Both the position numbers and the translations under genes were made by a program. A model generated the notes under the pieces. That model was not told the DNA's origin. It made no database searches and saw nothing but the letters and a program-made list of their open reading frames with translations. A DNA stretch of 64,000 nucleotides from Sphyrna mokarran (lineage: Eukaryota): positions 1,054,001-1,118,000 of the forward strand of contig JAGIQG010000043.1 of assembly GCA_024679065.1 (NCBI GenBank). The letters are read 5' to 3'. Below are positions 9,913 through 48,687 of this stretch, piece after piece. The number at the start of each line of letters is the position of its first letter. Within the stretch, counting starts at the first letter, position 1.

Positions 9913-9999
9913 TGCCCTTGACCCAAACGGCGAGACTCTGAGTCCCCGGTCCGAATCTCACTGAAAACTCGCTCTTTTTCTCTCTGCGTGAGGGAGTGT

Positions 10000-10830: not shown

Positions 10831-10844
10831 ACAGGCAGAATTGA

Positions 10845-17000: not shown

Positions 17001-18075
17001 CATCTGTTTTGCCAGTCACATTCCTCGCATTAAAACACATGCACTGAAGACCCTCAGGCCCTCTCTGATCCTCCTTCCTACCCTCTGGACTTACCCTGTC
17101 ACCCATCTCTCTCCCTCTCCCAGTTCCCTCTGTCTCCCCACCCACCCTCCATATTAGTTTAAACCCTGCCAAAACACTCCAGCTAACCTCCCAGCTAAAA
17201 TATGGGTGCCCTTCCTAGACAACTGTTCCCCGTCCCTCTTGTATAGATGCCCCTCCCTCATGAAGAATTCCCAATGGTCTATGAATCTGAAACTCTCTGC
17301 CCTACACCAATCCCTCAACTACGCATTTAGTTGGAGTACCTCATTATTCCTAACTCTATCAGTCCCGGGCATTGGCAGCAGCCCAGAGAATGCCACCCTG
17401 GAGGCCCTACACTTCAGCCGATCCCCTAACTCCCTGAACTGCCTACGTATGTGCCCCCTGCACTTTGTTCCTACATCCTTCTCTCCTACGTGAACTATTA
17501 CATCAGCCTTAGACCCTCCACCCTTCAAAATTCCCTCTACCCTCTCTGAAACATCCTGGACCCCTGCTCCAGGAAGGCAGACTACCATCCTGGAGTCCCG
17601 CATTTGCCCACAGAACCGCCTGTCGATCCCTTTGACCTTAACTCCCCCACCACCATCTCACATCCCGCATTCCTGCCGTCCTCCGGGGCATTCTGATCCC
17701 CCTCCGTTGCCCTCTCTACCTCAGCTTTTGCCCTACCCTTGATATTCTGGGATGCCTCCTCTGAGGTGATCTTAATGCCGTGACTCCTTTTCTTTTTCCA
17801 CTTCCTATCTGTAACCCACCCATCCCTCCTCCTAGGCCCTGGGGTCCCCTCAGGACTATGGTCCCTATTCATTATCCCCTCATTCTCTCTGACTAAAAAC
17901 ATATCTTCCAATCTCAGCTCCAGCTGCCTCACCCGAGCCCTCAAACGTTGCAACTCTAAACTCTTTGTGCAAATGTGGGCTTTCGGGAGACGTGCTGCAT
18001 CCAAGAATGCCCACATATGGCAACGAACACAGTGGACGCGTTTATTCAAGGACCCTGACATTTTCTAGACCCCCT
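14015..18075 (-). mobile_element. Near full-length but decayed CR1 LINE (ORF1 zinc finger/zipper plus esterase; ORF2 APE plus RT)
   Basis: ORF1 CVRCHMW..LRARVRQLE and VCLPGAGVQD..VHVG; APE FNAR..VTET, GDFNFP, SDH; RT FADD; internal stops and one internal deletion. Confidence 0.9.
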
Positions 18076-21000
18076 TTAGCGTATTGAACACAGCTTGGCG
18101 TATTGAAATATTACTGAGTGACTTTAAACCACATCAGGAGCAATAAAGCTTCACAATGCCTTGTAAAAATTCCATTTTCACCTTCAAATATATGGTTTTG
18201 ATTATCCTAAGCTGTTTTCTTTACAAGAACGAGAGAAGTTTCAGCCATTTCGAGGGAAATCTGATATTGAAAACACAAAATCAGTTTAATGTGAATCCCT
18301 CACTCTCCCGTCAAATATCAGTTTGTACTTTTAAAGTCATTTTGTAATTATTTATGTTGACCACCTATGAAAGAAATATACTTTACAATATTCGCTGGAA
18401 ACATTTGCACTGAAGTGATACAGCTCCACCTATGGGCAAATTCGTATTTGCACGAGGGCCATGAGAAAGGAGGTCAGGAAACATTTGATACGATTGACTG
18501 AAGCGTTAGTCATTCGGCAGCCAGATGTTATACCTCAATAATATATTCCCCGTGATTTTAGTTCGCTTGAATTCTGAGCCAAGATTTAGCACTTCTGCCT
18601 TACAGCGTCAACAATCCAGGTTTGATCCCCCCTTGGGTCACTGTCTGTGTCGGTGTTTTCTCTGGGTGCTCCCGTTCTGTTCAACAGTCGAAATACTAGG
18701 TGAATTGGCTATGCAAATTCTCTCTCAGTTAATGCGAATATGTGTCGGAGTATGGTGAGTCACAGCTGTTGGAATTTGAAAAATTGCAACATGTTTCTTG
18801 TTGAGGAGGTGAATACAAGTTACAAAACAGGTATCTGAAGTGAAAATAAAGATCAGCCACAATGTGACTACAAGATAGAATATTCTCGAGTTACTGAATA
18901 TATCCCCTCTCCGATGTTTGAGACCACGTGACATTGTCTCTTGGGCAAGCACTGAAATGAAGTACTGTTTTCCTGACTCGGGTTTGCAGGTCAGATATAA
19001 CAAAGTTTCATTTTCTATGCCCTTGCACTGATTGCAATGCCGGATTTTGTTTTCTATCCCTGAAACGAGCGATTCGCTGGTACTGTTCTGGTATCTGAGA
19101 TAGGCAATACCAGATATAGACGGTTAGTCACCTGCGGGGGAAAAAAAATACAGTGATCGATCACATTGTCATGTTCACCATTGATTAAATTCGATTTTAA
19201 TATAATTCGTTAATTAATTTCATTTACATTTATCCATCTGTCGGGCTTGTATTTGCAATTATCCATCTTGAAATAATGACTAACACTTGCCACTCAAGTG
19301 AGTGTCTCTTAGTGAATATTTTCGGCTGGTGTGGGACAACTCTATAGTTCCTAACACACAGTGGACATTGTGATTCCCTCTGCATCGGTTGGACACCTCG
19401 ACTCTCTCCAGGTGGCCTCCATTTAAGACATGAAGTGCTTCCATCTTGCGGTCCTGCATGTCTCTGGCCTTTCCAAAATTGATTATGCTTGCATGTGAAC
19501 AGAAACAAAAAACGTCTGAGATTTTTTGAACAGTGGTCGTGGACTCATCCACTTCCCAGAGGAGCAGAACCTCCCAACGGATATATTGATGATTGTTTCC
19601 CATGATCAGCTGCAAACCATTCATTCTTTCACCATGAAATTCTGATTATAAAAAGTAGGTATTGGCTTCATTTTCTGCGTGGCTTACTCGCTCAGTGTTC
19701 TAACCCTACAATTCCGCTCTTCCAGGGGATGACTGATGCAAAGGGATGCAGCACCACCGAGGACGATACAATATTCGTGGGCTGCGGTAACTCAGAGGAC
19801 TGGAAGGACTGTTGAAAATGCACTTTTTCAGAGAGCACCGGCTGCTGTTAAAAATGGCGAACGATAAACTTCAGAACGGTGCGAATTATGGCTCAACGTT
19901 TGCTCCTCATAAGGTAAGACCCTCAGTCTGCAACGTTAAATATTTACTAGCGCCTGCCAAATACACATGAAAACTCGCCCCAATTATGTTGAAAAGGCAA
20001 TCTTACTCAATTCAGCAACAGGACTGTTTCTGGAATGAATTCGAATGGGCACAGGAGGCAGCAGAATGTTGCATTGAATTAATTCCAAACACCCTACTAT
20101 ATTTTGTTTTAAGAAAACACGTACCCAATGAAGAACGATTCAAAATGCTGCAAATAACTTTGTAACGGTTTCACTCAACATATTTCTCATTATGTCTTTG
20201 TGTCATGTTTGCGTCATAATTCACCTCTTGACTAGCGGGCTGTGGGCCATCTATTCTGGGCTGACGGTTAAGTTTCACAGGAATTTCCTCCCACTTCTAC
20301 ATAACAGCCGCCAGTCTCCAACATCCTGGTAGTTATTTCTGTTGACTCCACACGAATAGAAGTAAACTGTTTGCGTCGAACCTGACTTATTTTTCATATC
20401 TTTAAAGTTTACATTGTCTCCCCTTCCCACTTTCAGCCTTGTCTTTCTTGGAGGACAAATCGTTACCAATTCAAAGCTTGCTCTGACTATTACAATTGTC
20501 AGATTAATTTTGTCCATGTTCTGACACAAACAAACATTTCTGCGTGGTATTTTTTCACCCGTGCTTTCAGACATCCGCGAACACAAGCATGTAAATATCT
20601 GACATTGCCAGCTCAACAAAAATCGCAGTATCACAAAGAAGATATTGAATTATACGTTTACTGTTTATCAAGATCAAGACAGACAAAATTTATACAGATA
20701 GAATAATAAATTGATATTCACGCTTCAACATTTGCAAAGATGTATAGTTCCTGTGAACAATTTGAGAGGTACAATTGTCTGAATATTTTCAATGGAATTC
20801 AGGAAATTTTCTTAGCCTCGCTCAATGCTTCTTCAAATTTGAAGAACACCGTTCCAATGTAATATCCAAAACACAACGTCCAATCATTTGCAGTGAAAAC
20901 TGGATCCTCCCTTTGGCGAATGCAGGGGGAAATTTCAGTTGTTTGAAGGGAATCCCTATTGGTTTCATATTGTTTCCAAGACGCTATGGGATTTTCGAGA

Positions 21001-22019
21001 AATCTTCCTTCTGGCAGGGGCGTAGTCAGGTCACACTAAAAGAATCACAAATTATAGAGACATCGTAGATTCCCTACAGAAGGTCTTCAGCCGATATATA
21101 TTTTAGATTACCCCGAACCGTCAACGCGTTGCATAACATCATAGAATGATACAGCTCAGAAAGAGACTATTTGCCAATTGAATCCATGCTGGGTTTTTGT
21201 TGGATATGTTTCTATGACCAGTTGACAGAGATGATAATTGCATATCGGAACTTTCACCCCCTAGTCCAAAAAATGGGAAAAGGAGGGCTTGCAAAGTCGG
21301 TCTGCCAAGCGCTCCCACACTCCACCTTGCTACACTTTTACGAGTCCATTTGGAACTTATTTCCCTCCACGTATTCACGTCACCTCTGAACTGATTACGA
21401 AAAATCACAAGCATACAACTCTCAAATCTTCCAACTGTGCCATTATTAAATATGGTCAAAGAACAATCTGCCTCAAATCTTCACTGTTGAAAGGCACTCC
21501 CCACAAACTGGCAATCTTTTTTGCCTTCAGTTTTTGTTCCCAACCTCTCAATCAAATGGCAACCACAATATGGTAGTTCTGATCCCATGTTTTGCGGAGT
21601 TTGGCAATAATCGTCTCGTGACTATCTTGTGGAAGAGTCACGTGCTTAGCAGTCAGAGATAATTTACTGTCTTACTGGTTAGTAAACTCCATAGAAATTT
21701 CAAATATATTCATCACATAAGATTACACTTTAATTAAAGTGCAGTTGCACTCTCTACACAGTTTATTTTGGTGAAATGTTGGCTCATGTTAGGGTATGAC
21801 AGCAGATCCGAAAAAAAAACTATCCACAGATATTGTTGCAGTCTTGAAGATATCTGCTTTCATTTTCCGTTTTAACCCTAATCACAATTAATAGGTTATT
21901 TCAGTGGCAGATGGTGCATAATATTGAAAAATGCAAAACTTTCCACTCAAGAGGAAAGATCCGAGAGTCAAGGTATTTTTCAAACTTGAAGGGTTGGGAC
22001 ATTCTGATATTCCAGTCTG

Positions 22020-22385
22020 AGCTGCACAGTGGCACTGTGGCCAGCACTGCTGCCTCGCTGCCGCGGGGATACTGCTTTAAATACATCTTTGGGTGACCCA
22101 TCTATGTGGAGTTTGCACCTTATTTCCCTTCTGCGTGGGTTTTCACCAGTACTTCAATTTCCTCCTCCACATCAAAAATGTGCTGTTGAGATCGATGACC
22201 ATTCTTATTTGCCCTTCAATGTCCGAAGATGGACAGGTTAGATTGATTTCCCCTGCCGAATTGCCCCTTCGAGTTACGAAGATTAGAAGGGTAAATACTA
22301 GGTTTACGGGAAATGGGCTTGGAGGGGGTTGCTGCCGGTGCAGCTCCGTGAGACAAATGCATAGTCGGGATTCTACGATTTTATA
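22020..22385 (+). mobile_element. Old HE1/V-SINE-like copy (mirror 49957-50322); paralogous copy at 32250-32610 (mirror 41350-41710)
   Basis: GCACAGTGG..AGCACTGCTGCCTC head and GTGGAGTTTGCAC core. Confidence 0.65.
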
Positions 22386-25300
22386 ATTCAGATAGCTTGA
22401 ATGTTCTTGTGCAGTCCAGAGGTTTATCAGAAGGTATTCAAGCAGTTTGGAAATCCATTATACGGTTCGTATTTATTGTAATGTTGGGTGTACTTCTTGA
22501 GATCGAAGAGCAAGAAATCCATGTTGCAAACAAACCGCAAGTCACTGAGATTATGCCAAGAATGCTGAGTGCCGTTTAGTTGTCTTTAACTGAGGAAAGC
22601 TGCGTTTGCATTTCAGGTAAGATTTCGATTGTTTGATTTCTGGCAGAAAAAAAGGCTTGTCCGATCTGGAGAGAGGCCTTAGAATGGATCGACATTAGTT
22701 GCAGTTCAGAAGAGTATTGTTATTAAATGATAAAATTCAAGCTGGGATCTCAGGAATAAGATTCAGAACTTGTTTGTGCCTCGCTGCGGAGTCTTGAACA
22801 GCGCGGTCATAGTCTCAAGATAAAGACTGAAATTAGCGGACAGTTCTTCATTCATAGATCTGCGAGCATTTGAGATGTTCTGCTCCAGGGAATTTTGGTT
22901 GTTCAATCGTCGGGAACATTGAAGGCAGAAATTCGCGTTCGCGAGGAATCAAGTCAATATGAAGTTAATGTCGAGTCAGATTTTAGTTGTCTGATGGAGA
23001 AGAACGTAAGTCTTTATTTAACATAATTCAGTATGTTAAACTCACGTGATTGTTACAATTCCTCGCCCTGACCACACAGTGCCGCTTGAAAATGCCTTGC
23101 CTGAGTCAGTTGTAGATGCGCCAAGTTTGGTGGCGTTTAAGAGGTTAGTAGATAATTTTATGGATGAAAAGGGAATGGATTAGTTTAGAGGGTCACTGCT
23201 TGTTCCTAATTGGTTGGCGCAACATCGAGGGCCGAAGGGCCTGTTCTGCACTGTAATGTTCTATGTTCTATGAACATGCCCATGCATTTCTCTATTATTC
23301 AGTCCTCCCGAAGGGAATTATTGCCTATTCCCTTTTCGTTTCTCCTTTTCCCTTACCTTGTCAAACACTCGACACTTTCCCATGCATAGAGTTGTGTCCA
23401 CCATTGATTCATGATGACAAGTCATTTATTTAAATCAAAAAGCCAAAAGAAGGCATGCTCAGAATGGAAAGGGGGTGGAAATTCTTATTGGTGAGGGTTC
23501 TTCACGAGTCTGATCCTGATGCAGTTCTTTGCTGGATGATGAAAATTGTGGAAACAAATGCCGCCATTGACTATCTAATTGAGAAAATGTCTGGCTGATG
23601 TCCAAAATATGGTTGGCACCAGTATTTGGTTTTGCATAGGAGAGCACAGAGTTATTAAAAAAGAGCAAACAACAAAGCAGCATGGGAAACAGGCCCTCCG
23701 AGCCAAAGAGTCCGCGCTGCCACCTCGACGTTCTCACTTCCACCCATGATCCTTGTCTATGTTTATAGAAACCTGCATTGGTATAACAATCTGCTTTGGA
23801 ACCAAATCTGTGAGACAATTCAGGGAGAATTTCTTCTGCCAATCAGCCTAAGAGCACGTCTTTGGGATGTGGGAGGAAACCGAAGCACCCGAAGAAAACC
23901 CACGTTAGCATGGGGGGGAATGTGCAAACTCCCACAGACACAGTGCCAATTCCATGTATCTGCAGAACACAGTGAGAGTCACTGAGCTGTCGTGTTGCCC
24001 ATGAACTAGTCCAGTTCCAGCCTACAGTAACGACGGGAAGTGCTAGGATACGATCGAAAAATCCAAGAGCAGCCCTCTCACGATCCATCGCGTGCATGCC
24101 CCTTGTTGGACACCAAGGTGGACCGAAATACCTGTAGGATAAAACAGAAAAAGATCAATATCATTCATAATGTGCTCCATTCTCAGGGAACTCTTAAGGC
24201 TCATGATCCCTATTTTAAATCAGTCTTCTACATCCGTCCATCCCCATTCTGTACTGTGCCCATCGAAGTATTTCAAAACTAACTCCAGCGTGCCTGCCTC
24301 CACCATCTTACTTGGCAGTGTCTTCCATACACCCACAACCCTCTGTGTGAAAAAAAAAAACTCTCTATAGCATCCGAATTATATCTTACCCCTCTCACCC
24401 TACGGCCGTGAACCCTCGTTATATTTGATTCCAACATAGGAAAACGCTTACCACTGTTTATTCTATCTGTACGCCTCATTATCGTGTACACCTCTTTTGG
24501 ATCTCCTGGCAATCTTTCGAAAAAAAATCAGCCCCAATTTGCCGACCCTCTCCTTGCAACACAGTCCTTCAATGCTATGCAGCATCCTGGTAAACCTCCT
24601 CTGCACTCTCTCTAGAGTGTCCACGTCCTTCTAGTAGTAAGATGACGAGAACTGGTTGCAATATTCCAAATGAGATCGAACCAAAATTCTATACACTTGC
24701 AACATTAAAGACCAGCTCTTGTACTCTAAATCACTTCCTATAAAGGTGAGCATATCATATGCTTTCTTCAGAACCTTCTCCACCTGCTCTGCCACCTTCA
24801 GAGACTTGTGCACCTGCACCCCCATGTCCCTCTGCGTTTCTATATTCTTAATAAGGCTACTCTTTACCATGTACCTCCGCTCTAGATTCTTTCTCCCAAA
24901 ATGCATCACCTCGCATTTATCAGGATTGAATTCCATCTGCCATCTATCTCCCAAGCTACCAGCCTATCTATATCCTGCTGTATCACCTGACAATGCTCCT
25001 CACAATCCGCAAGTCCAGCCATCTTTGTATCGTCTGCAAACTTGCTGATCACTCCACTTACTCCCTCTTCCAAGTCATTTATATATATTACAAATAGAAG
25101 TACCGAGAAATATGGTACTGAGCCCTGTAGCACAACACTAGTGACCGGCCTCTAGCTAAGAAAAAAAAACCCTTCCACTATTACTCTTTGTCTCCTATTA
25201 CCTAGCCAGTTACTTATCTATCTAGATACCTTTCTTTGTGTTCCATTAGCCTTGACCTTTTTAACTAACCTCCTATGAGGGACTTTGACCTTGCTGAAAT

Positions 25301-25929
25301 CCATGCAGACGATATAAATGGGTCGCCCTTCATCGGCGTTTTTGTCACCTCCTCAGAAAATTCTACCAGATTCGTAAGGCACGACCTCCCATGAACAAAG
25401 CCATGCTGCCTATCCCTAATCAGATCGCAAAACTCTACCTTATTTCTAAGAATCCCCTGAATCAGCTTCCCTACCACTCACGTCAAATTCACTGGCCTAT
25501 TTGAATACATTCGCATGAGTGCCTTTTCCGAGTCTTTACGTCGCTCGTCGACGTTTTTGTCTACCACTAGCAGATCCCACGCCTTGGGCTCTTGATCTTA
25601 AAGTACCACGGGTAGCACCCCAGCCGGGGTCTACTGAAGTTACCAATTGTTGCCTGCAGACCCCAGCCGGGGTCTGCCCAGGGCATATTTCGTGGCTCGC
25701 AGAGCTCCAGCCGGGGTCTACTGATGTCATTGTGGCTCGGTTGGGCACCCTGAGTGTGTTTAGGGCAGGGTGTGAGCTGGTACCGTCGCCCCCTGATCTA
25801 ATTGGGCGTTTAGAGAACCTTTGTCGGTATTTTCGGTGCTCGGTCCTCTTGCGTGAGGTGGGAAATTTAGAATTTAAGGGAAAATTTTATTCCGAATTCA
25901 GGGAAGCCAGATTAGGTGACGTGACAATT

Positions 25930-26120
25930 GTTCATAACCAATTAACCTAGTTAGCACATTTTTGGCCATGTGGGAGGAAACCGGAGTACCCAGGGAAAAC
26001 CCACGCGAACACGGGGAGAAAGTGCAAACTCCCCCAGCCGCAAGGCCCAGGTCGGGAACCGACCCTGGGTCCAAGTAGCCGGTCAACCTCAGTGCTAATC
26101 ACTGGGCTGACGTGCTGCCC
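25930..26120 (-). mobile_element. V-SINE (HE1-like) head and V-domain embedded in the R2-related element
   Basis: GGGCAGCACG..CAGTGATTAGCACTG..GGACCCAGGGTCGGTTCCCG..GGAGTTTGCACTTTCTCCCCGTG..CTCCGGTTTCCTCCCACA. Confidence 0.8.
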
Positions 26121-26431
26121 ATTCGTACCGTGACACCTTTGGGGGGTAATCGGTGTCATTATCTTTCGTCATCGTCTGGTAGTGAACATCCAAGACAAGA
26201 CGGGGCACACGTCCCATCTCAGCGTCACCCCAGGTGCGTCTCGTTCGTCTCACCCTTTGTACCGATGGTGTGGGTAGTGGGTCGCGGTTGCTTCTACTAC
26301 CTAGGCAGGGTGAACCGCATCCGCCAGCGGATCACCAGTGCCCCCGGGCCAAGCCTGAACTTGTCGAGAACCTAGTTTTTTGGAAATTTACCGGGTTTGT
26401 AGGCATAGAAGCGTGTTGGTTATCCTCGGCC

Positions 26432-26634
26432 AGTCAGATTCCGACAGACACTCGCCTGCCAGCAGGAGTGCCTGGATTCCCTGCGGGACCATCGGTAAGG
26501 GATGACTCACTGTGGTCTAGAACAACCAAAAATACCACAGCGACGCAACACACACCATAATCCATTCCAGCTTCACCACTCTAGGATGGCAGTCCTGTGG
26601 TAGTGGTCATGGACCTGGCATGCATCGCCCCCGC
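26432..26634 (-). ncRNA. Degenerate HDV-like ribozyme-shaped unit 3
   Basis: P1 GCGGGG/UCCCGC; hairpins GCGAUGCA/UGCGUCGC and CUGUGGU/ACCACAG; P2 AGUCA/UGACU; P4 AGGCACUC/GAGUGUCU; catalytic core not canonical. Confidence 0.5.
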
Positions 26635-26650
26635 TATTTGTTTCTCGACC

Positions 26651-26799
26651 AGTCACAGAATACCCTCTCTTGTGCCCAAGGAGAAGGTACCAGGTGGCTC
26701 CCGCGGAAGGGATTGACTCGCTGTGGGTAGAAACCAGAAGACCCCACAGTTACGATTGGCCGTTAACGCCTTGTTTCGGCTAACCAATCATACCCCACC
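26651..26799 (-). ncRNA. Degenerate HDV-like ribozyme-shaped unit 2
   Basis: P1 GGUGG/CCACC; hairpins UAUGAUUGG/CCAAUCGUA and CUGUGGG/CCCACAG; P2 AGUCA/UGACU; P3 CCC-UUCCGC-GGG; P4 UACCUUCU/AGAGGGUA. Confidence 0.55.
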
Positions 26800-26862
26800 G
26801 GTCTGTAACCGCAACCTTAAGGGGCATCCAGGCATGCAATTACTCCGCATCGTTTCTGGGAC

Positions 26863-27113
26863 AGCCGCTTTAGCCGCCACCGCGATGGATGTGCGGTGAC
26901 GTTGCCCGGCGGGACCGACGTGGAGGCGCAGCTCGCTGTGCGGCAGAAACGACAAGACCCGCACAGCTAAAGTAACCAAGAAACCTCAAGAGAGTCCCCC
27001 CAAGAGAGTCCTCCTTAAGAGAGTCATAGCTACTCCCGAGGGAATAACTAGAAACCTCAAGAGAGTCCCCCCAAGAGAGTCCTCCTTAATTTTTAAGAGA
27101 GTCATAGTTACTC
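26863..27113 (-). ncRNA. HDV-like (R2-type) self-cleaving ribozyme, core 26863-26933
   Basis: P2 AGCUGC/GCGGCU, P3 GCC/GGU, L3 UCCACGUC, P1 3' strand CCCGCC, GGGCAAC junction, P4 GUCACCGC/GCGGUGGC, J4/2 GGCUAA with the catalytic-C equivalent at 26873. Confidence 0.85.
27013..27113 (-). other. Two 28S rRNA fragments matching the sequence immediately upstream of the R2 insertion site
   Basis: 27113-27093 GAGTAACTATGACTCTCTTAA (21 nt exact) and 27038-27013 CGGGAGTAGCTATGACTCTCTTAAGG (25/26) versus the conserved 28S GGCGGGAGTAACTATGACTCTCTTAAGG^TAGCC. Confidence 0.9.
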
Positions 27114-28769
27114 CAATTTCCAGAGTTACACCTACTACTCTTTTTAAACAAAGGTACAACATTGGCTATTCTCCAGTCTTATCGGATCTCACCTGCGTCC
27201 AAAAAAGAGACAAAAAATTGGGTCAGAGGCCCAGCAATTTCACCTCGTGCCTCCCTAAGCAGCCTGGGATAAATGCCATCAGGTCCTGGAGATTTATCAG
27301 TTTTAATGCTCCCTGGAAGCTCTGATACTTCCTCCCTCGGTATGGATATTGCCTTTAACTTGCCTACAGCTCCCTCGGAGACAGGACCGGTCAACAAGCC
27401 CTCTCCTTCGTGAATACTGACGCAAAGTATTCATTCAGAATCTCTCCCATTCCCTCAGACTCTAAGCATAGTTCCCCTCCTCTGTCCCTAAGTGGACCGA
27501 TATTTCCTCTAACCACTCTTTTATTCCTAACATAGGAGTAAGAAGCCGTTGGATGCCCTTAATCCTATCTGCCAAAACCATTTCATGCCCTCCCTTTTGT
27601 CCTTCTAACTCCCCATCTGAGCTCCCTCCGGCTTTCTCTATATTCCACCAGCGCTCTCTCCGTTCCCAGTTGCTTTGAACTTCATGCAATGTGGCGGCCA
27701 GAATTAAAAACAATGCTACAAATTGGGGCCCATCAAAATTAAAAAACAACTGAAACGACCAGTATCAGGGATGAATCGGGCACGGGCCCCAAATCATTGG
27801 CTACATTTCTAGATCAAAAGTCCAACGAAAACACTACGAGACCACCACTTCCTCCTCATAAGAAATAAACATTAGTCCAGAATCCTGTCTTTACTTTCTT
27901 CTAACATAGTTTCATTTTACACTTTGACATCGGCCCAAAATGTCTCCTGCTAAAAAAAACAGCATCTCAGCAACAATGTGGTACTCCCTCGACATTGCAC
28001 GGATGTAACGACACGGATCAACTGCCAAAGTTTCAAGAACAGAATTGAGAATAAGAAATCCAGATCATGAATCTGTTATGATTTAGACACTCACGAACTG
28101 GAAATAAGTGTAGGCCACTCGGAAATTCGAGTTCTGCCATTCATTTTGATTATGGCTCATGATCCCATTCAATATCCTGATCCTCTCTCCTCCAGCCACC
28201 CCTCACCTCGTCCTCCCACCTCCCTGACCACTGTCACCCACTCACCATATCCCTTGCTTCCTTTACCCCTAAGAAAATGTCTAATTTAATCTTCAAAGTG
28301 GACTCCGAGAAAGGGACTGAAATTGATTTTGGTGCCTCTCACATCCGCCAATTTCCATCACCCCATCTTTCCTGCTTTGCGGTAAGCTGACACGGACCTC
28401 AGTTCTGGAGCTCTATCCCTGAACCGCTCTGCCTTTGAGTCTCTTTAAAATAAATCTTAAACCTGTTTGCCAATATTTATAGCTTAAACGGCCTAATCTA
28501 GGCAGCATCACTGGTCAACCTCTTCTGCAACTTTTCCAAAGCAACTACGTCCTGCCTATACTGCGGCGACCAGAATTGAATGCAATACTCCAAATGCGGC
28601 TTAATCGGAGCTTCATACAGTTGCATTTGCCAGCACTTCCCGAGATGAAGATCAAATCCGGACCCTGAGAACATTAGCTGAATTTCAGGATTAATAATTC
28701 AGGATAATATAACGAGGCCAACGTCTCCTCCTTGATCAGAATAAATATTAGTACAAAGTCTTATCGTTT

Positions 28770-30165
28770 CTCATAACATTTACACACTTTGATTCAAATT
28801 GTTCTGATTCACTTCAGAGTGATGGATCAAGAGGTGTGTGCATACAATTAGCCGATGTTTATAATGTAGATAAATGTGAGTTAGTCCACCTTGGTAGCAA
28901 AAATAGGGAGGCAGTATATTATTTGAATAGGTGTAACTTAACAGAAGTAGATACTCAATGAGACCTTGGTTTCCTCGGGCATCAGTCACAGAAACAAAGT
29001 GCGTAGGTAGAGCGAGAATTAAAGGAGGAAAATGGTATGCTAGCCTTCATAGCGAGGGGATTTAAGTATATGGATAGGGAAGTTTTTCAACAATTGCATT
29101 GGGCGTTGGTACGCCACACCTGGAATATTTTGTGCATTTGTGGTGTCCTTGTCTAAGGAAAGATATAGAGAGCGCAGCGAAAGTTCACCAGGCTGATTCG
29201 TGAGATGGCAGGTCTGTCACATGAAAAAAGAGATAGAACATAAAACATACAACACTACAGCACAAACAGGCCCTTCGCCCCACAAGTTGTGTCGATCATA
29301 ACCATACATATTGTGCCACAGAATTATCTGTAACGCCCAATCCTATTTAATCCATATACTCATCCAGAAGTCTTTTAAAAGGCCCCAGCGAGTTACGCCT
29401 CCACCGCCACCGACGGCAGTCAATTCCAATCACTCACCACCCTCTGCGTAAAAAAAAACCTACCCTGCAACAGCTCTTCTGTACTTGCTGCCCAGCACCT
29501 TAAACCTGTGTCCTCTCATAGTGACCATTACAGCCCTGGGAAATAACCTCCGAGAATCCACTCTTTCCAATGCTCTCAACATTTTAAAAACCTCTATCGG
29601 GTCGCCTTTCAACCTTCGTCTCTCCAGGGAGAAGAGACTGAGCTCCCTCAACCTATCTTCATAAGGCATGCCTCCCAATCCAGACAACATCCTTGTAAAT
29701 CCCCTCTGCACCCTCTCGATAGACTCCACATCCTATATATCATATACGATTATATTCACTGGAATTTGGAAGACTGACAAGGAATCTCATGGAAACGTAT
29801 GAATTTTTTCATCAGTTTGTGATGGTGGATGCAGAAAGCAAGTTTCCGATGGTGGGGGAGTCCAGATCTAGTGTTCATATTTTGAAGGTAAGTGTTCATC
29901 TTTTAGCACTGAGCTAAGGAGACATCTCTTCACTCAGAGAGCCGTGAATATGTAGACTTAACTGCCACAGAAAGTTGTTGACACAAAAACATAGTGTTAT
30001 TTCTAGACGATACTAGGTATATCTCTTGGGAATCCAGAATTTAAGGGATATGGAAGTCAGGCGAGGTCAGGGCATGAATTTGATGATTACCCATGAACAA
30101 AATGAATGATGGAAAAGGTTTGAATGGCTGAATGGCCAACACCTGTTTCTATGCTCAGTGCTACA
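28770..30165. mobile_element. Old plus-strand LINE fragment with an inverted LINE 3' fragment nested at about 29232-29735 (mirror 43790-45186)
   Basis: ERVQRGFTRML..LFSLERRRL motif on the minus strand, flanked by colinear plus-strand LINE remnants. Confidence 0.7.
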
Positions 30166-30544
30166 ATGTAACCATTTTGACACTCCTCTTTCGAATTATG
30201 CTATGCGTACGGAGTAGCAAAATGCCCTCCCGGGAGTGAATGAATGTCAGCTTTCACTTTGACAAATAATAACAAAGGCAGGTCGTTTCTTAAATGAGAA
30301 ATTGGCAATTGTGACCAGACAACGGGGCCTAGTTATCTTTGCTCTTGAGTTACAACATGTGGGTGTATAAGCAAGTCGGAAGGTTCCCAAGGTTTGGAAA
30401 ACTTCATCGCCAAGGCACTTATGCACACTTGTAAGGGTTTCATTGATGTATATATATATAGGTTTGCCCACATGGTTATTGTTCATATTATTACCACGCA
30501 TAATTAATCTCTAGATATGCACCTACTTTCTTTTTGTTTAGCTT

Positions 30545-30892
30545 CAGACATGGGGGTGTCTAGTTGCTGAGCATTTCTTGTACCTCATTAGTTGCCCCAG
30601 GGCAGTTGAGACTCAACAACATTGCTGTGGCTCTGGAGTTCAATATAAGACAAATTTGGTAAGGATAGAAGATTCCTTTCCATAAAGGGTATTAAAAAAA
30701 CATTTTTTTTTTGTTTTTTAATAGTCGACAATGGTTTAACGGACATCAGTAGATGTTTAGTTGCACTTGCTTCTTTTTTTCTTGAATTCAAATTCCACCT
30801 TCAGCCATGACAGTATTCGAACCCGGGTCCCCAGAATATTAGCTGAGTTTCTCGATTACTAGTGAGAATGCCACTCGGCCATCGTCTCGCCT
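30545..30892 (-). mobile_element. tRNA-derived SINE, SacSINE1/Deu-like (mirror 43063-43410, plus)
   Basis: GATGGCCGAGTGG A-box, GGGTTCGAATAC B-box, GGTGGAATTTGAATTCAA body; family assigned from memory of shark SINE consensus sequences. Confidence 0.55.
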
Positions 30893-33029
30893 ATTTACTC
30901 CCTACCATCCAAAAACCCCAATCCTGTATATCCTTCGTGACGGCTCTATGTGTTTATTGTATAGGGATCTTGTGAAAGAGGGAGTAGAACAACGGTTTAC
31001 CAGGTAGATTCTTGGGTTGCCGTTCTGTCATTTCAAGAGAGACTTATCCCGTCAGTACCATATTCACTGGAGTACAGATGAGTGAAAGGGGATCTTATAG
31101 AATCATATAAAATTTCAACAGGTGTAGACAGGGTAGATTCAGAAAGAATGCCCCCAATGGTAGGGGAGTCACGAACAAGTAATCAAATTTTGAGGAGATT
31201 GGGCAAACCATTTAGAAAGGAGGGGACGTTTATTCACCCAGAGAAAGTAGCTGAGGCCAAATTGATGCCTGATTTCAAGAATAAGTTCGATTTATGGCTA
31301 AAGGGATGAAAGGAATTGGGGGAGGGGGGATCAGTATATGTTATGCGATGATAAGCCACGAACTAAATGAATGGTGGAGCAGGCTAGAAGGGCTGAATGG
31401 CCTGCTCATTTTTTTTGTCTCTGTGTTTCTATGAACAGTTGACAAACATGATTATTTCATATTGGAAATTTTGCCATCTACTCCAGGACCATGGGACCAG
31501 GAGAGTTTGTAATGTTGGTTTGCGAACTCTGCCCGCACCCCACTAAAAATCAGCTCGCTCACCACTTTAACGAGTCAGTTTCGAACTTACCGTTCCCGCC
31601 TTGCATGTGTTCACGTTCTCTCTGAGCCAATTACACAAAATCACAAATATGCAACTCTCAGTTCTGTCATCACAATCATCATCAAATATGGAAAAAGAGC
31701 AAATGTACCTCAAATCGTCATTGATGAAGGGCACTCCCCACAACCCGGGAATCGTTTTGCTTTACTCTCTGTTCCAAACCTCTCAATCAATTTGCAACCA
31801 CAACCTGAAAGTTCTAACTCCATGCAGTGCGGAGTTTGACAATAATCGCCTATTGGTCACCTTGTGGGAGAATCATGTGGTTATCATTAAGAGAGAATTT
31901 GCTATCTCACTGGATAGTAAATTCCGAAGTATTTTCAATTATACTCATCAGTCAGGACTCCACTTTAATGAAATTTTCGTTGCACTCTCTACTCAGTTCA
32001 TTTCGGTGAAGTATATGTTCATATTAGGTATGACAGCAGATCGTAATAAATTCCCCACAGCTGTTGTTACAAGCTTGAGGATATCTGGTTCCACTTCCCG
32101 TTCTAACTCTAAACGTAATTAATTGACTAATTAAGTGGACGGTGGTATGTGATATTGAAACATGTGAAAGTATTCACTCGAGTGGAAAGATCTGAAAATC
32201 AGGATTCTTGTAGAACTTGTCGGATTAGGACATTCTGACATTTCAGTATGAGCGGCACAGTCGCACAGTGGTCAGCAATGCTGCGTCACGGCGCCAGAGA
32301 CCTTTGTTTAGTTACATCCTTGGGTCACCATCTGCGTGGAGTTTGCACCTCTCCCCGTGTCTGCGTGGGTTTCCACTGATGCTTCAGTTTCCACTCACAG
32401 ACCAAACATGTGCTTATTGTGTGGACTGGCCATTTTATTTGCCCCTTAGTTTCCAAAGATGGGCAGTTTGGATTGATTTGCCCTTCTAAAATTCCCACTA
32501 CGGTCAGGAAGATTAGCAGCGTAAAAACCTGGGTTCATGAGAAATAGGTCTTGAGGGGACTGTTGCTATTATAGACTCACTGATTCAAATTCATAAGTCC
32601 TATAATTTTATGATTCAGATAGCTTTCATGTCCTTGTGCAGAACATATATTTACCAGAAGGTACCCGAGCAATTAAAAAACACATTTCTTTGCTGCTATT
32701 TACTGCAATGGTTGGAGTATTTATGATGATCAAATAGTAAGAAATACTTATTGCAAGCAAACCTTATGTCAGTCAGATTGTGCCCAGAATACTGAATGCC
32801 GTTTAGTTGTCTTTTTTATAGGAGAAAGCTGCATTTGCCTTTCAAGTAAGATTCTGAAGCTTTATTCTGGCAGGAAAGATTTGTCCTGTCTGAGCACATT
32901 CATTAGAACGGATCAACGTTAGGTGGACTTCAGGAAATGAATATCTGTTATTGAAAAGATTCGGGCTACGATTTAAGTATTGAGATTGAGAACTTGTTCA
33001 TGCCTTGCTGGTGAGTCGACAACATCGAG

Positions 33030-35480
33030 GCCTAATATTAGGCCTAATATTGATTGGAATAGCTATAAATCCAGCTCGTTAGAGGGGTCAGTTTTTGTAC
33101 AAAGTGTGCAGGAAGGTTTTTTGACTCAGTAAGTAGATAGGCCAACTAGAGGTGAGGCTACATTGGATTTGGTGCTGGGCAATGAGCCAGACCAGGTGTT
33201 AGACTTGGAAGTTGTGAACATTTTGGTGATAGTGACCACAATTCGGTTACGTTCACCTTAGTGATGGATAGGGATAGGCATGAAGCTGGGGTCAGTAGTT
33301 ATAGCTGGGGGAAGGGTAATTATGAGGCCATCAGGAGAGAATTAGGGTGCATAGATTGGACTAGGGAACTACAGGGACTGGGAACATCTGGAATGTGGTG
33401 CTTATTCAAGGAGCAGCTGCTGCGAGTCCTTTATAAGTATGTCCCTGTCAGGCAGGGAGGAAATGGACGAGTAAGAGAGCCTTGGTGTACGAAAAGAGTT
33501 GATTTGCTGGTTAAGAAGAAAAAGGAGGCTTATGTCAGGAAGAGGCTTGAAGGCTCAGGTAGTGCAATGGATAGCTATAGATTAGCTAGGAAGGAGGTAA
33601 AAAGTGAATTGAGGAGAGCTAAGAGGGGACACGAGAAGATGTTGGCTGATAGGATTAAGGAGAATCCTAAAGCTTTCCTTCGATATGTTAAGAATAGAAG
33701 ATTGGTTAGGGCAAGATTAGGGCCAGTCATAGACAGCAGTGGGAAGTTGTGCGTGGAGCTGAAGAGATTGGAGAGGCACTGAATAAATATTTCTCTTCGG
33801 TATTCACGCAGGGTGATGTAAATGTAGTTATGGAGAACACTGAGGTACAGGGTTGCAAACTGGAAAGTATTGAAGTAGATAGGGAGGATTTGCTAGATAT
33901 TCTCGAGGGTTTGAAGTTGGATAAGTCCCCTGGGCCGGACGGGATTTACCCTAGGATTCTCTGGGAGGCAAGAGAGGAGATTGCAGAGCCTCTGGCTCTG
34001 ATCTGCAGGTCGTCGTTGGTTACGGGTGTGGTTCCGGAGGACTGGAGGATAGCGAATGTGGTCCCGTTGTTCAAGAAGGGGAAGAGAGACCTTCCAGGGA
34101 ATTATAGGCCAGTGAGTCTTACTTCTGTTGTGGGCAAAGTATTGGAGAGAATTATTAGGGATAGGATTATAGTTATTTAGAGAGAAATGAATTGATTGGG
34201 GATAGTCAGCATGGTTTTGTGAAGGGTAGGTCGTGCCTTACTAACCTCATTGAGTTTTTTTGAAAAAGTGACCAAAGAGGTGGATGGGGGTAAGGCGGTT
34301 GATATGGTATATATGGACTTTAGTAAGGCGTTCGATAAGGTGGCCCATGGAAGGCTTCTGCAGAAAATGCAGATGTATGGGATAGAGGGTGATTTAGCTA
34401 ATTGGATTAGGAATTGGCTAGCGGATAGAAGACAGAGGGTGGTGGTTGATGGGAGATATTCAACGTGGAGTTCGGTTACAAGTGGTGTACCTCAGGGGTC
34501 TGTTTTGGGGCCCCTGCTGTTTGTAATTTTTTATAAATGATCTGGATGAGGGTATTGAAGGATGGATTAGTAAATTTGTGGATGACACTAAAGTCGGTGG
34601 AGTGGTAGATAGTGAAGAAGGGTGTTATAGTTTGCAGAGAGACTTGGGCAAGTTGCAGAGCTGGGCTGAGAGGTGGCAAATGGAGTTTAATGAGGAAAAG
34701 TGTGAGGTAATGCACTTTGGCAGGAGTAATAAATGTGTAGAGTATAGGGCTAATGGTAGGATTCTTAACAGTGTTGATGAACAGAGGGATCTTGGTGTAT
34801 TTGTGCATAGATCCCTGAAAGTAGGCAGTCAAGTCGATAAGGTTGTTAAGAAGGCATACGGAGTCTTAGCTTTTATTGGTAGGGGGATTGAATTTCGGAT
34901 CGCAACGACATTTTGCAACTGGACAAAACTCTAGTGCGGCCACCCTTGGAGTATTGTGTGCAGTTCTGGTCCCCACATTATAAGAAAGATGTGGAGGCAC
35001 TGGAGAAGGTACAAAGGAGGTTTACCAGGATGTTGCCTGGTATGGAGGGCAGGTCTTATGAGGAGAGGCTCAGGGATTTGAGGTTGTTTTCGTTAGAAAG
35101 GAGGTGGCTAAGAGGAGACCTTATCGTAACATATAAGATGATTAGAGGTTTAGATAGGGTGGACAGTGATAGCCTTTTTCCTAGGATGGAGAAAGTTAGC
35201 ACGAGGGGACACAGCTTTAAATTAAGGGGAGGTTGTTATAGGACGGATATCAGATGTAGGTTCTTTACCCAGAGGGTGGTTAGGGAGTGGAATGCCCTGT
35301 CTGCGGCAGTTGTAGATGTGCCAAGTTTGGTGACGTTTAAGTGGTTAACTGATAAGTTTATGGAAGAGAAGGGAATGGTTTAGTTTGGAGGTTCATTGCT
35401 TTTTTCATAATTGGTCGGTGGAACATCGAAGGCCGAAGGGCCTGTTCTGCGCTGTAATGTTGTATGTTCTATGTTCTAGG
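33030..35480 (+). mobile_element. 5'-truncated CR1 LINE (APE end plus RT plus 3' UTR)
   Basis: LDLVLGNEP..SDH, KSPGPDG and GVPQGSVLGP motifs; several homopolymer frameshifts; (GTTCTAT)n tail. Confidence 0.9.
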
Positions 35481-36419: not shown

Positions 36420-36642
36420 AACTCCAGAACGCATCAACACATTAAATGTAATTTGCCATGGCCAATCAACTTGACTTACATATCTTTAGACTATGGAGAG
36501 AAATTGTCGCAACGAGAAGACTCTTGCAGAGACACGGAGAGATTGTGCAACCTGCACTCTGTTAGTGTTCCAAGCCAGGTTCCAAACCCAGGTTCCTTGG
36601 ATCTGTGAGGCAGCAAGGCTAACCATTATGCCACGGTGCCGG
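36420..36642 (-). mobile_element. Degenerate HE1-like SINE (mirror 37317-37550, plus)
   Basis: GGCACCGTGGCATAATGGTTAGCCTTGCTGCCTCACAG head. Confidence 0.65.
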
Positions 36643-36961
36643 TCTACTACATGACCACGATGTAATTTGCATATTACTTCATGGTTTTAAATGGTGCAAA
36701 ATTTTATTTTTTTCTGAACGATGGAAATTAATGACAGAAAAATTGATGGTTGTTGTATTGTTGAACCACTTCGTTTTCTTTTCATTTGAAATGCATGTGA
36801 CCTCGCCTGTATGATCGCGTCAAATCAGGAATCAGATCATACATTTTTCCTTAATATCTATAATTTTCCCCTCACTCACATCACAAATCTACGATCAGTT
36901 AGGGGCCAAATCTAGCCCTGTTAGAATTTTGTACGTTTCTGCGAAGTTGCCTCTCACTCTT

Positions 36962-46275: not shown

Positions 46276-48687
46276 GTTCAAAGCAACTGGGAACGGAGAG
46301 AGCGCTGGTGGAATATAGAGAAAGCCGGAGGGAGCTCAGATGGGGAGTTAGAAGGACAAAAGGGAGGGCATGAAATGGTTTTGGCAGATAGGATTAAGGG
46401 CATCCAACGGCTTCTTACTCCTATGTTAGGAATAAAAGAGTGGTTAGAGGAAATATCGGTCCACTTAGGGACAGAAGAGGGGAACTATGCTTAGAGTCTG
46501 AGGGAATGGGAGCGATTCTGAATGAATACTTTGCGTCAGTATTCACGAAGGAGAGGGCTTGTTGACCGGTCCTGTCTCCGAGGGAGCTGTAGGCAAGTTA
46601 AAGGCAATATCCATACCGAGGGAGGAAGTATCAGAGCTTCCAGGGAGCATTAAAACTGATAAATCTCCAGGACCTGATGGCATTTATCCCAGGCTGCTTA
46701 GGGAGGCACGAGGTGAAATTGCTGGGCCTCTGACCCAAATTTTTGTCTCTGTTTTGGACGCAGGTGAGATCCGATAAGACTGGAGAATAGCCAATGTTGT
46801 ACCTTTGTTTAAAAAGAGTAGTAGGTGTAACTCTGGAAATTGTAGGCCAGTGAATTTGACGTGAGTGGTAGGGAAGCTGATTCAGGGGATTCTTAGAAAT
46901 AAGGTAGAGTTTTGCGATCTGATTAGGGATAGGCAGCATGGCTTTGTTCATGGGAGGTCGTGCCTTACGAATCTGGTAGAATTTTCTGAGGAGGTGACAA
47001 AAACGCCGATGAAGGGCGACCCATTTATATCGTCTGCATGGATTTCAGCAAGGTCAAAGTCCCTCATAGGAGGTTAGTTAAAAAGGTCAAGGCTAATGGA
47101 ACACAAAGAAAGGTATCTAGATAGATAAGTAACTGGCGTGGTAATAGGAGACAAAGAGTAATAGTGGAAGGGTTTTTTTTTTCTTAGCTAGAGGCCGGTC
47201 ACTAGTGTTGTGCTACAGGGCTCGGTACCATATTTCTCGGTACTTCTATTTGTAATATATATAAATGACTTGGAAGAGGGAGTAAGTGGAGTGATCAGCA
47301 AGTTTGCAGACGATACAAAGATGGCTGGACTTGCGGATTGTGAGGAGCATTGTCAGGTGATACAGCAGGATATAGATAGGCTGGTAGCTTGGGAGATAGA
47401 TGGCAGATGGAATTCAATCCTGATAAATGCGAGGTGATGCATTTTGGGAGAAAGAATCTAGAGCGGAGGTACATGGTAAAGAGTAGCCTTATTAAGAATA
47501 TAGAAACGCAGAGGGACATGGGGGTGCAGGTGCACAAGTCTCTGAAGGTGGCAGAGCAGGTGGAGAAGGTTCTGAAGAAAGCATATGATATGCTCACCTT
47601 TATAGGAAGTGATTTAGAGTACAAGAGCTGGTCTTTAATGTTGCAAGTGTATAGAATTTTGGTTCGATCTCATTTGGAATATTGCAACCAGTTCTCGTCA
47701 TCTTACTACTAGAAGGACGTGGACACTCCAGAGAGAGTGCAGAGGAGGTTTACCAGGATGCTGCATAGCATTGAAGGACTGTGTTGCAAGGAGAGGGTCG
47801 GCAAATTGGGGCTGATTTTTTTTCGAAAGATTGCCAGGAGATCCAAAAGAGGTGTACACGATAATGAGGCGTACAGATAGAATAAACAGTGGTAAGCGTT
47901 TTCCTATGTTGGAATCAAATATAACGAGGGTTCACGGCCGTAGGGTGAGAGGGGTAAGATATAATTCGGATGCTATAGAGAGTTTTTTTTTTCACACAGA
48001 GGGTTGTGGGTGTATGGAAGACACTGCCAAGTAAGATGGTGGAGGCAGGCACGCTGGAGTTAGTTTTGAAATACTTCGATGGGCACAGTACAGAATGGGG
48101 ATGGACGGATGTAGAAGACTGATTTAAAATAGGGATCATGAGCCTTAAGAGTTCCCTGAGAATGGAGCACATTATGAATGATATTGATCTTTTTCTGTTT
48201 TATCCTACAGGTACTTCGGTCCACCTTGGTGTCCAACAAGGGGCATGCACGCGATGGATCGTGAGAGGGCTGCTCTTGGATTTTTCGATCGTATCCTAGC
48301 ACTTCCCGTCGTTACTGTAGGCTGGAACTGGACTAGTTCATGGGCAACACGACAGCTCAGTGACTCTCACTGTGTTCTGCAGATACATGGAATTGGCACT
48401 GTGTCTGTGGGAGTTTGCACATTCCCCACCATGCTAACGTGGGTTTTCTTCGGGTGCTTCGGTTTCCTCCCACATCCCAAAGATGTGCTCTTAGGCTGAT
48501 TGGCAGAAGAAATTCTCCCTGAATTGTCTCACAGATTTGGTTCCAAAGCAGATTGTTATACCAATGCAGGTTTCTATAAACATAGACAAGGATCATGGGT
48601 GGAAGTGAGAACGTCGAGGTGGCAGCGCGGACTCTTTGGCTCGGAGGGCCTGTTTCCCATGCCGCTTTGTTGTTTGCTCTTTTTTAA
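46276..48687 (+). mobile_element. Decayed CR1 LINE, uninterrupted mirror of 23655-27680 (holds the empty target site at 46842/46843)
   Basis: Continuous ..GTAACTCTGGAAATTGTAGGCCAGTG.. (the LINE PGNYRPVSL-like region). Confidence 0.88.

What the first reader, a model, noticed from the sequence alone, without database searches (positions are those of the whole stretch)
26432..26850. Tandem array of three ribozyme-shaped units with conserved pairing but diverged sequence
Seen: units 2 (26799-26651) and 3 (26634-26432) repeat the layout of unit 1: G-rich P1 strand, hairpin A, hairpin B (CUGUG..CACAG), YGAG, P2, P3/L3, P1', P4, P2'. Stem sequences differ but remain complementary: P1 GGUGG/CCACC and GCGGGG/UCCCGC; hairpin A UAUGAUUGG/CCAAUCGUA and GCGAUGCA/UGCGUCGC; P2 AGUCA/UGACU in both. 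L3 and J4/2 are non-canonical (UUCUG and AUC instead of GCUAA). A decayed 28S-like site, GCGGAGTAA..CTTAAGGTTGC (26848-26811), lies between units 1 and 2. Inference: the 28S-plus-ribozyme module was captured repeatedly, and internal copies lost catalysis (cutting would truncate the element) but kept the fold, possibly for RNA stability or protein binding.
Basis: partly seen in the sequence, partly recalled or inferred. Interest (0 to 1): 0.85.

Follow-up and report, generated by a model that had tools for sequence, protein, structure and literature searches.

The report
Three tandem ribozyme-derived modules in R2 element
A small, recently inserted, protein-less relative of the ribosomal-DNA retrotransposon R2 carries at its front end one normal-looking self-cutting RNA followed by two old, diverged copies of it that have kept most of their stems but probably no longer cut.

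Summary
The three units are true paralogues. Core alignments beat shuffles: u1-u2 z 13, u2-u3 z 9.2 (0/500 each), u1-u3 z 2.5 (14/500). Leave-one-out covariance models find the omitted unit at 29 bits and nothing else in the window.

On an unbiased MAFFT alignment, hairpin B, P2 and P3 are paired in 46 of 51 cells. Five of 17 pairs changed on both sides; 2/500 shuffles match this, and slid controls give 33-45% paired.

There are weak points. P1 of units 2 and 3 is no better than chance. P3 of unit 3 is only 2 bp. Units 2-3 match no Rfam ribozyme family. A loose HDV topology descriptor is not discriminating.

Context: the array heads a 1,614-bp ORF-less R2-type element (27113-25500, minus strand). 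The element sits in one arm of a >99% identical inverted duplication whose other arm is empty. The array was therefore retrotransposed uncut and recently.

Best reading: tandem reiteration of a leader-plus-ribozyme module. Only unit 1 is catalytic, and only in a 28S context. Units 2-3 are non-cleaving structured derivatives. Any function for them is inferred.

The scan had noted this same stretch before (s1-887573, s1-887584), but not on other DNA.

The parts
25500..27113 (-). Whole inserted element, 1,614 bp. It has no ORF of 80 aa or more on its strand.
   Evidence: The filled site here and the empty site at 46842|46843 lie in the other arm of an inverted duplication. ORF list.
27050..27113 (-). 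First copy of the 28S-derived leader (it starts about 22 nt before the R2 site) plus about 40 nt of element 5' sequence. It is a tandem duplicate of 27036-26979.
   Evidence: 87.7% identity over 65 columns. Alignment z 15.5, 0/1000 shuffles.
27013..27040 (-). Second 28S-derived leader. The local remnant of the unit-1 P1 strand (CUCGGG) gives only 4 of 6 pairs with P1'.
26863..26966 (-). Unit 1 core. Hairpin B 26966-26936; P2 26933-26928 with 26868-26863; P3 26927-26925 with 26916-26914; P1' 26913-26908; P4 26900-26893 with 26883-26876; J4/2 GGCUAAA.
   Evidence: Rfam RF00094 gives 25 bits, E 0.36, below the gathering score of 50, with the GGGCAAC and GGCUAA blocks matched. Stems.
26811..26848 (-). 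Decayed 28S-like leader at the start of unit 2 (GCGGAGUAA ... CUUAAGGUUGC).
   Evidence: 5/1000 shuffles against the unit-1 leader, 29/1000 against the unit-3 leader.
26651..26799 (-).
26432..26634 (-). Unit 3: P1 strand at the leader start, long hairpin A, hairpin B, UGAG, P2, weak P3, P1' UCCCGC, AGGG, P4, J4/2 GUCGGAAUC, P2'.
46820..46865 (+). Empty target site in the other arm (break between 46842 and 46843). Its upstream flank resembles the element's 28S-derived leader at the right distance from the break.
   Evidence: 11 of 15 matches, 22/2000 shuffles, 31/2899 random 31-mers of the window.

Best explanation
The stretch is the middle and rear of a head-to-tail array of three paralogous modules. 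Each module is a 28S-derived leader of 72-99 nt followed by an HDV-like ribozyme core of 105-116 nt. The array forms the 5' end of a non-autonomous (ORF-less) R2-type retrotransposon copy.

Shown:
- The three modules are homologous.
- Hairpin B, P2 and P3 keep pairing through changes on both strands.
- P4 and hairpin A are position-conserved hairpins of unrelated sequence.
- Only unit 1 keeps the canonical catalytic blocks.
- This copy inserted recently at a 28S-like site in a decayed LINE, with all three units intact.

Inferred:
- The module was reiterated in tandem. Either one junction was formed once, by a template jump or microhomology join, and then duplicated, or modules were added stepwise at the 5' end.
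- In a master copy sitting in 28S, unit 1 pairs its P1' with the G+C-rich 28S stretch at -28 and cuts there. Units 2 and 3 therefore travel inside the RNA.
- Units 2 and 3 do not cut, or cut poorly. Otherwise everything upstream of them would be lost at each round.
- Their stems were kept by selection on the RNA of the replicating lineage, most likely as a compact, stable, uncapped 5' region that resists 5' degradation and supports 5' junction formation. They were not kept as ribozymes.
For: Paralogy:
- z 13, 9.2 and 2.5.
- leave-one-out models find the omitted unit full length at 29.2 and 29.1 bits. The next hit is 12.2 bits, E 0.35.

Covariation:
- 46/51 cells paired, 5/17 pairs changed on both sides, 2/500 shuffles, slid controls 33-45%.

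Divergence:
- Core identity is 58%, 60% and 52%, and 35-44% in the P4 stretch. Yet P4 is 8-9 bp in each unit.

Hairpin stability:
- z -2.4 to -3.9, against controls of -0.45, +1.07 and -0.50.

Catalytic blocks only in unit 1:
-.

Young, intact insertion:
- Arms are 99.6% identical on one side, with 3-12 differences per kb on the other side near the site. The empty site is at 46842|46843.

Literature (passages read):
- -28 cleavage with P1 from 28S, and tandem duplications of upstream 28S at 5' junctions (PMC3774820).
- R2 reverse transcriptase template jumps in vivo, and R2 SIDEs (PMC3414825).
- The ribozyme fold, not cleavage, improves 5' module function, and its stability matters (PMC11331408; PMC12222951).
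Against: - There is only one locus and three sequences. No other family copy could be fetched, so covariation rests on paralogues, and mostly on unit 1 against units 2/3.
- P1 of units 2 and 3 is at chance level. The ancestral P1 position of unit 2 no longer pairs with its P1'.
- P3 of unit 3 is 2 bp, +0.8 kcal/mol.
- Whole-unit z of unit 2 is only -1.45.
- The MFE fold of unit 2 prefers a 7-bp outer helix that competes with P1 and P2.
- The compensated changes could date from a time when each unit was still an active ribozyme.
- Both internal J4/2 stretches still hold a cytosine, so residual cutting is not excluded.
Confidence: 0.5

Rival explanations
1. Neutral relics. Units 2 and 3 are dead ribozyme copies with no present role. 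The compensated pairs arose earlier, while each was still a working ribozyme, either in the same lineage before inactivation or in different co-existing R2 lineages before fusion. What is seen now is partial decay.
For: - Several helices are already damaged: the ancestral P1 of unit 2, P3 and the first P1 pair of unit 3, the 6th P2 pair and the 8th hairpin-B pair in both.
- Only one compensated pair separates unit 2 from unit 3.
- A and D lineages of R2 co-exist in a shark species (PMC13188248, passage).
Against: - 90% of cells are paired at 52-60% identity.
- Three unrelated P4 sequences all form 8-9 bp stems.
- The hairpin B loop is also conserved between units 1 and 2.
- The copy is young, so the divergence arose inside a lineage that kept retrotransposing.
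Confidence: 0.3
2. Units 2 and/or 3 are still self-cleaving, with unusual cores. They would give alternative, shorter 5' ends, and the array would be a set of nested processing sites.
For: - Both keep CC in L3 and GG after P1', as needed for P1.1.
- Both keep a cytosine in J4/2. Unit 3 reads GUCGGAAUC.
- Unit 3 keeps a 6-bp P1 at the leader start.
Against: - This copy was reverse-transcribed with both units uncut.
- One unpaired base lies between P1' and the GG in both units.
- P3 of unit 3 is 2 bp.
- There is no Rfam HDV-type match at E up to 10.
- P1 is at chance level.
Confidence: 0.12
3. Chance resemblance: units 2 and 3 are unrelated sequence that happens to allow a ribozyme-like drawing.
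For: - A loose HDV topology descriptor finds other, equally good 'folds' in the same sequences.
- P1 is at chance level.
Against: - Sequence paralogy at z 9-13.
- Leave-one-out models at E 3.3e-5 and 1.1e-4, with no other hit in 38 kb.
- Covariation against slid controls.
Confidence: 0.03

Closest known systems
R2 HDV-like ribozymes that cut 28 nt upstream in 28S (Eickbush, Burke and Eickbush 2013, PMC3774820)
   Same: Unit 1 has the same core blocks and a P1' complementary to the G+C-rich 28S stretch. It has a long structured J1/2 holding the 28S leader. Tandem duplication of the upstream 28S piece at the 5' junction is described there and is seen here (27113-27050 against 27036-26979).
   Different: In the passages read, that paper describes one ribozyme per element. 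Here two further diverged copies of the whole leader-plus-ribozyme module follow the first.
R2 SIDEs, short internally deleted non-autonomous R2 elements (Eickbush and Eickbush 2012, PMC3414825)
   Same: An ORF-less element with an R2 ribozyme at the 5' end and a structured 3' end. Template jumps by the R2 enzyme add foreign sequence at 5' ends.
   Different: SIDEs were found in rDNA of Drosophila with a single ribozyme. This copy lies outside rDNA, in a LINE, in a vertebrate-type genome, and carries three modules.
SIDER2 retroposons of trypanosomatids, with two in-tandem Pr77 hallmarks derived from the L1Tc HDV-like ribozyme (PMC4035085)
   Same: A non-autonomous retroposon whose 5' end holds a tandem duplication of an HDV-like ribozyme-derived signature. 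The duplicates have diverged.
   Different: A different retrotransposon clade (L1Tc/ingi, not R2). The units are 77-79 nt without a target-derived leader. The second signature there is a site of mRNA cleavage or decay.
Engineered non-cleaving HDV-like folds as 5' modules of R2 templates (PRINT; Palm et al. 2024, PMC11331408)
   Same: A folded but non-cutting ribozyme shape at the 5' end of an R2 template, with an rRNA leader inside J1/2, supports insertion. Thermodynamic stability is the stated determinant.
   Different: Those are laboratory constructs with a single module. Nothing natural with stacked inactive modules is described in the passages read.

Membership tests
HDV-like self-cleaving ribozyme (units 2 and 3) | Nested double pseudoknot: P1 and P2 crossing, with P3 and P4 inside | tested here: inconclusive
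   P2, P3 (unit 2) and P4 are present at homologous places with covariation. P1 is at chance level. P3 of unit 3 is 2 bp.
HDV-like self-cleaving ribozyme (units 2 and 3) | Canonical catalytic J4/2 with its cytosine and following purines, and P1.1 directly after P1' | tested here: not met
   J4/2 reads UUCUG (unit 2) and GUCGGAAUC (unit 3), against GGCUAAA in unit 1. One unpaired base (U, A) separates P1' from the GG in both. The canonical form is judged from unit 1 and from recalled knowledge of the family.
HDV-like self-cleaving ribozyme (units 2 and 3) | Match to a curated covariance model of the family | tested here: not met
   No HDV-type family at E up to 10 in 26420-26860 or in 26200-27300 apart from unit 1. 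Unit 1 itself reaches 25 bits, below the gathering score of 50.
HDV-like self-cleaving ribozyme (units 2 and 3) | Self-cleavage at the 5' end of P1 | not testable with these tools
   Needs an in vitro transcription/cleavage assay or RNA 5'-end mapping.
Descent from an R2 ribozyme (paralogue of unit 1) | Sequence-plus-structure homology to a canonical R2 ribozyme core | tested here: met
Non-autonomous R2 element (SIDE-like) | R2-type ribozyme with 28S-derived leader at the 5' end, and no ORF | tested here: met
Non-autonomous R2 element (SIDE-like) | 3' end shared with the autonomous R2 of the same genome, and mobilisation by the R2 protein | not tested
   No autonomous R2 lies in the window. 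Earlier notes of the scan name such copies elsewhere, but I could not read them. Indirect evidence: no target-site duplication, and a target resembling the 28S leader.
Non-autonomous R2 element (SIDE-like) | Multiple copies forming a family | not testable with these tools
   No second copy in the window. No eukaryotic genome collection is on hand.

The most novel reading that the evidence does not exclude
The internal units are selected, non-cutting 'spare front ends'. Each module packs a 28S-like leader inside a compact pseudoknotted fold. If the uncapped RNA is degraded from its 5' end, degradation stalls at the next fold. The RNA then still presents a protected end with target-like sequence for joining the cDNA to the upstream target. 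This would be a natural, stacked version of the engineered non-cleaving ribozyme 5' module, evolved by a parasite of a parasite.
Probability: 0.2. Interest if true: 0.7.

Novelty: new variant of a known kind. Interest (0 to 1): 0.5.

Why it matters
R2 ribozymes are now used as 5' modules of RNA templates for gene insertion. Two groups report that the fold and its stability, rather than the cut, decide how well the template works.

A natural element that carries one cutting ribozyme plus two diverged, apparently non-cutting copies with compensated stems would be an evolutionary experiment on that question. It would show which helices of the HDV-like fold are kept when catalysis is dispensable.

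It would also be a clean case of ribozyme-to-structural-RNA exaptation, or of its first steps.

The copy is very young and lies outside rDNA. This points to recent R2-type activity at 28S-like sites in this genome.

Tried and rejected
1. Rfam at gathering thresholds over the whole window gave nothing. With E-values, only unit 1 matched RF00094, weakly. Units 2-3 matched nothing relevant.

2. I wrote a loose HDV-topology descriptor to compare with shuffles. I abandoned it because, in the real units, it preferred other arbitrary combinations. The script also had a faulty pruning line. Its only use is to show that topology alone does not discriminate.

3. Collecting family copies failed.
- Self-BLAST and three covariance models found no further copy in the window.
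- One metagenome pattern scan gave a single chance hit in a G+C-rich 266-kb contig, L001, which is unrelated on inspection.
- A look-up of earlier findings by sequence was blank.
- No eukaryotic genome collection is on hand.

4. Reads: the run search listed 8 coded runs. The best DNA run holds 0.64 of the words, and a second organism holds 0.29.

5. Pfam on two stop-free pieces of the host LINE gave no family. That the flank is a decayed LINE reverse transcriptase rests on its translation read by eye and on recalled motifs.

6. Literature. Four full-text searches and passages of eight papers showed no R2 element with several ribozyme modules. The supplementary ribozyme structure figures of PMC3774820 and the tables of PMC13188248 could bear on this, and I did not see them.

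7. I rejected an alternative P1 for unit 2, in which the ancestral leader start GCGGAG pairs with UUCCGC. That partner is the L3 of the homologous alignment, and all three units have the same 24-nt spacing from YGAG to the GG.

Full report
WHAT IS THERE

Read on the minus strand, 27113 to 25500 is a 1,614-bp insertion. The window is a large inverted duplication. Bases 8344-25499 match 64000-46843 at 99.6%, and 27114-36900 match 46842-37065 at 97.0%. Within about 6 kb of the site there are only 3-12 differences per kb. The other arm runs straight through the site, with the break between 46842 and 46843. So the insertion is younger than the last homogenisation of the arms, and its boundaries are exact. 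There is no target-site duplication.

The host sequence translates as a decayed LINE reverse transcriptase by eye. Pfam did not confirm this on two stop-free pieces.

The 15 nt that end 8 nt before the break resemble the element's own 28S-derived leader at the matching distance: 11 of 15 matches, 22/2000 shuffles, 31/2899 random 31-mers.

The element has no ORF of 80 aa or more on its strand.

It starts with 28S sequence from about 22 nt before the R2 site. It then repeats that leader plus about 40 nt once more (87.7% over 65 columns; z 15.5). Unit 1 follows.

UNIT 1

The core at 26966-26863 carries the sequence blocks of HDV-type ribozymes. Rfam RF00094 aligns it end to end at 25 bits, E 0.36 in 1.1 kb. 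That is below the gathering score of 50, but the GGGCAAC and GGCUAA blocks are matched.

Its P1' (CCCGCC) has only a 4-bp partner in the local, mutated leader.

According to PMC3774820 (passages), many R2 ribozymes take their P1 strand from the G+C-rich 28S stretch at -28 to -22 and cut there. In some species the 5' junctions carry tandem duplications of that upstream 28S piece. Both features fit this element.

THE FINDING ITSELF

The three units are paralogues.
- Local alignment of the cores (hairpin B to P2') gives z 13.1 for u1-u2 and 9.2 for u2-u3 (0/500 shuffles each), and 2.5 for u1-u3 (14/500).
- Core identities are 61/105, 63/105 and 57/110.
- A covariance model built from units 1+2 finds unit 3 full length at 29.2 bits (E 3.3e-5 in 38 kb, both strands), with no other hit.
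- A model from units 2+3 finds unit 1 at 29.1 bits (E 1.1e-4). The next hit scores 12.2 bits, E 0.35.

COVARIATION

I used a MAFFT alignment made without reference to structure (A1) and wrote in hairpin B, P2 (as a pseudoknot) and P3.
- 46 of 51 cells form standard pairs (90.2%).
- 5 of 17 pairs carry a change on both sides.
- 2 of 500 column shuffles reach these values.
- Sliding the partners by 1-3 columns gives 33-45% paired and 0-2 such pairs.

The compensated pairs are two in hairpin B, two in P2 and one in P3. The pairwise alignment reads one of the hairpin B changes as a base pair inserted on both strands.

Four of the five separate unit 1 from units 2/3. Only one separates unit 2 from unit 3.

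P4 and hairpin A cannot be aligned between units: identity is 35-44% in that stretch. Each unit nevertheless has an 8-9 bp P4, and units 2 and 3 have an 8-9 bp hairpin A.

Against 300 dinucleotide shuffles:
- hairpin B: z -3.35, -2.46, -2.41
- hairpin A: z -2.89 and -3.88
- J/P4/J stretch: z -3.68 (u1), -3.21 (u2), but only -0.88 (u3, 55/300)
- whole units: z -2.56, -1.45 (25/300), -2.43
- three control stretches: -0.45, +1.07, -0.50

WHAT DOES NOT HOLD UP

P1, the helix that makes the fold a double pseudoknot and sets the cut site, is not distinguishable from chance. With P1' fixed at the homologous place, 831 of 2000 shuffled leaders (unit 2) and 431 of 2000 (unit 3) offer a helix at least as good.

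In unit 3 the P1 strand at least sits at the leader start, where the 28S-derived strand should be.

In unit 2 the leader start (GCGGAG, 26848) no longer matches P1'.

P3 of unit 3 is 2 bp at the homologous columns. A 4-bp alternative overlaps P2.

The MFE fold of unit 2 prefers a 7-bp outer helix that competes with P1 and P2.

My loose topology descriptor found other 'HDV-like' combinations in the real units that scored as well. Shape alone proves nothing here; homology-anchored covariation does.

ARE UNITS 2 AND 3 RIBOZYMES?

Four features argue against it.
- Their J4/2 stretches (UUCUG; GUCGGAAUC) differ from that of unit 1.
- Both have an unpaired base between P1' and the GG that should form P1.1.
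- Neither matches any Rfam family of the type at E up to 10.
- This very copy was reverse-transcribed from an RNA that still contained both, upstream sequence included.

That a catalytic cytosine in J4/2 is essential is stated in PMC11331408. The other core rules I apply are recalled.

Both units still hold a cytosine in J4/2 and the CC/GG for P1.1. Weak activity cannot be excluded by sequence.

HOW THE ARRAY AROSE (INFERENCE)

Each unit is a leader (72, 99 or 94 nt) plus a core. It resembles the unit-1 leader (5/1000) and, across the preceding tail, the start of unit 3 (AGAAAC..AU then GCGG; 29/1000).

The same junction at both boundaries suggests one junction formed once and then duplicated in tandem. 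Stepwise addition at the 5' end, giving oldest unit 3 and youngest unit 1, would also explain why the leaders look progressively more decayed. I cannot decide between the two.

R2 reverse transcriptase does jump templates in vivo (PMC3414825).

FUNCTION (INFERENCE)

The copy is young, so the 40-48% divergence between units arose inside a lineage that kept retrotransposing. Kept stems therefore point to selection on the RNA. Alternatively, they date from a past in which each unit was itself an active ribozyme.

Two laboratories report that an HDV-like fold at the 5' end of an R2 template helps insertion even when it cannot cut. They attribute this to stability of the uncapped end (PMC11331408; PMC12222951). 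That gives a plausible role for stacked non-cutting folds, but nothing here tests it.

COMPARISON WITH WHAT IS KNOWN

Already described:
- R2 ribozymes with -28 cleavage, duplicated 28S leaders and structured J1/2
- R2 SIDEs (PMC3414825)
- R2 in cartilaginous fishes, including co-existing lineages (PMC13188248; PMC5035012)
- a tandem pair of HDV-like-derived hallmarks at the 5' end of SIDER2 retroposons (PMC4035085)

I found no report of an R2-type element with several leader-plus-ribozyme modules in four searches or in the passages read. Supplements were closed.

I do not know the source organism. The run ids were coded.

LIMITS

- There is one locus and three sequences.
- There are no reads.
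- There are no other family copies.

Earlier notes of this scan on the same stretch (s1-887573, s1-887584, s1-887655) agree with the anatomy given here. Notes on other pieces of the genome name further R2 copies that I could not read.

Noticed in passing
window 8344-36900 and 37065-64000: The window is one large inverted duplication (palindrome) with arms of at least 28 kb. The outer parts are 99.6% identical. The inner 4 kb next to the centre (about 33000-36900) carries 51-68 differences per kb bin. It could be a real palindrome with gene conversion, or two haplotypes joined head to head in assembly.
   Followed up: partly
window 25500-25700 (minus strand): The last 200 nt of the element fold much better than shuffles (z -3.94, 0/300). 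They hold a motif repeated three times (CAGUAGACCCCGGCUGG-like). This is probably the protein-binding 3' end of the element.
   Followed up: no
window about 25920-26120 (minus strand): A SINE-like segment inside the 3' half of the element has at least eight other copies in the window at 78-88% identity. Earlier notes say R2 and a CR1 family share such a 3' module.
   Followed up: no
window 46808-46842 and 27114-27145: The LINE sequence just upstream of the insertion point resembles the 28S-derived leader at the right offset (11/15; about 1% of random 31-mers do as well). Other copies of this LINE family might therefore be recurrent ectopic R2 targets.
   Followed up: partly
window 26966-26936, 26749-26721, 26540-26510: The stem of hairpin B is conserved, and so is its 15-17 nt U-rich loop (GUCUU..GUUUCU), especially between units 1 and 2. 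A conserved loop suggests a contact site, protein or tertiary, rather than a mere spacer in J1/2.
   Followed up: no
runs X2, X5-X8: Runs labelled as four other organisms share 5-29% of the sampled 31-letter words of 26400-27113. Near-identical pieces of the array, or of its 28S leader, therefore exist beyond the source organism.
   Followed up: no
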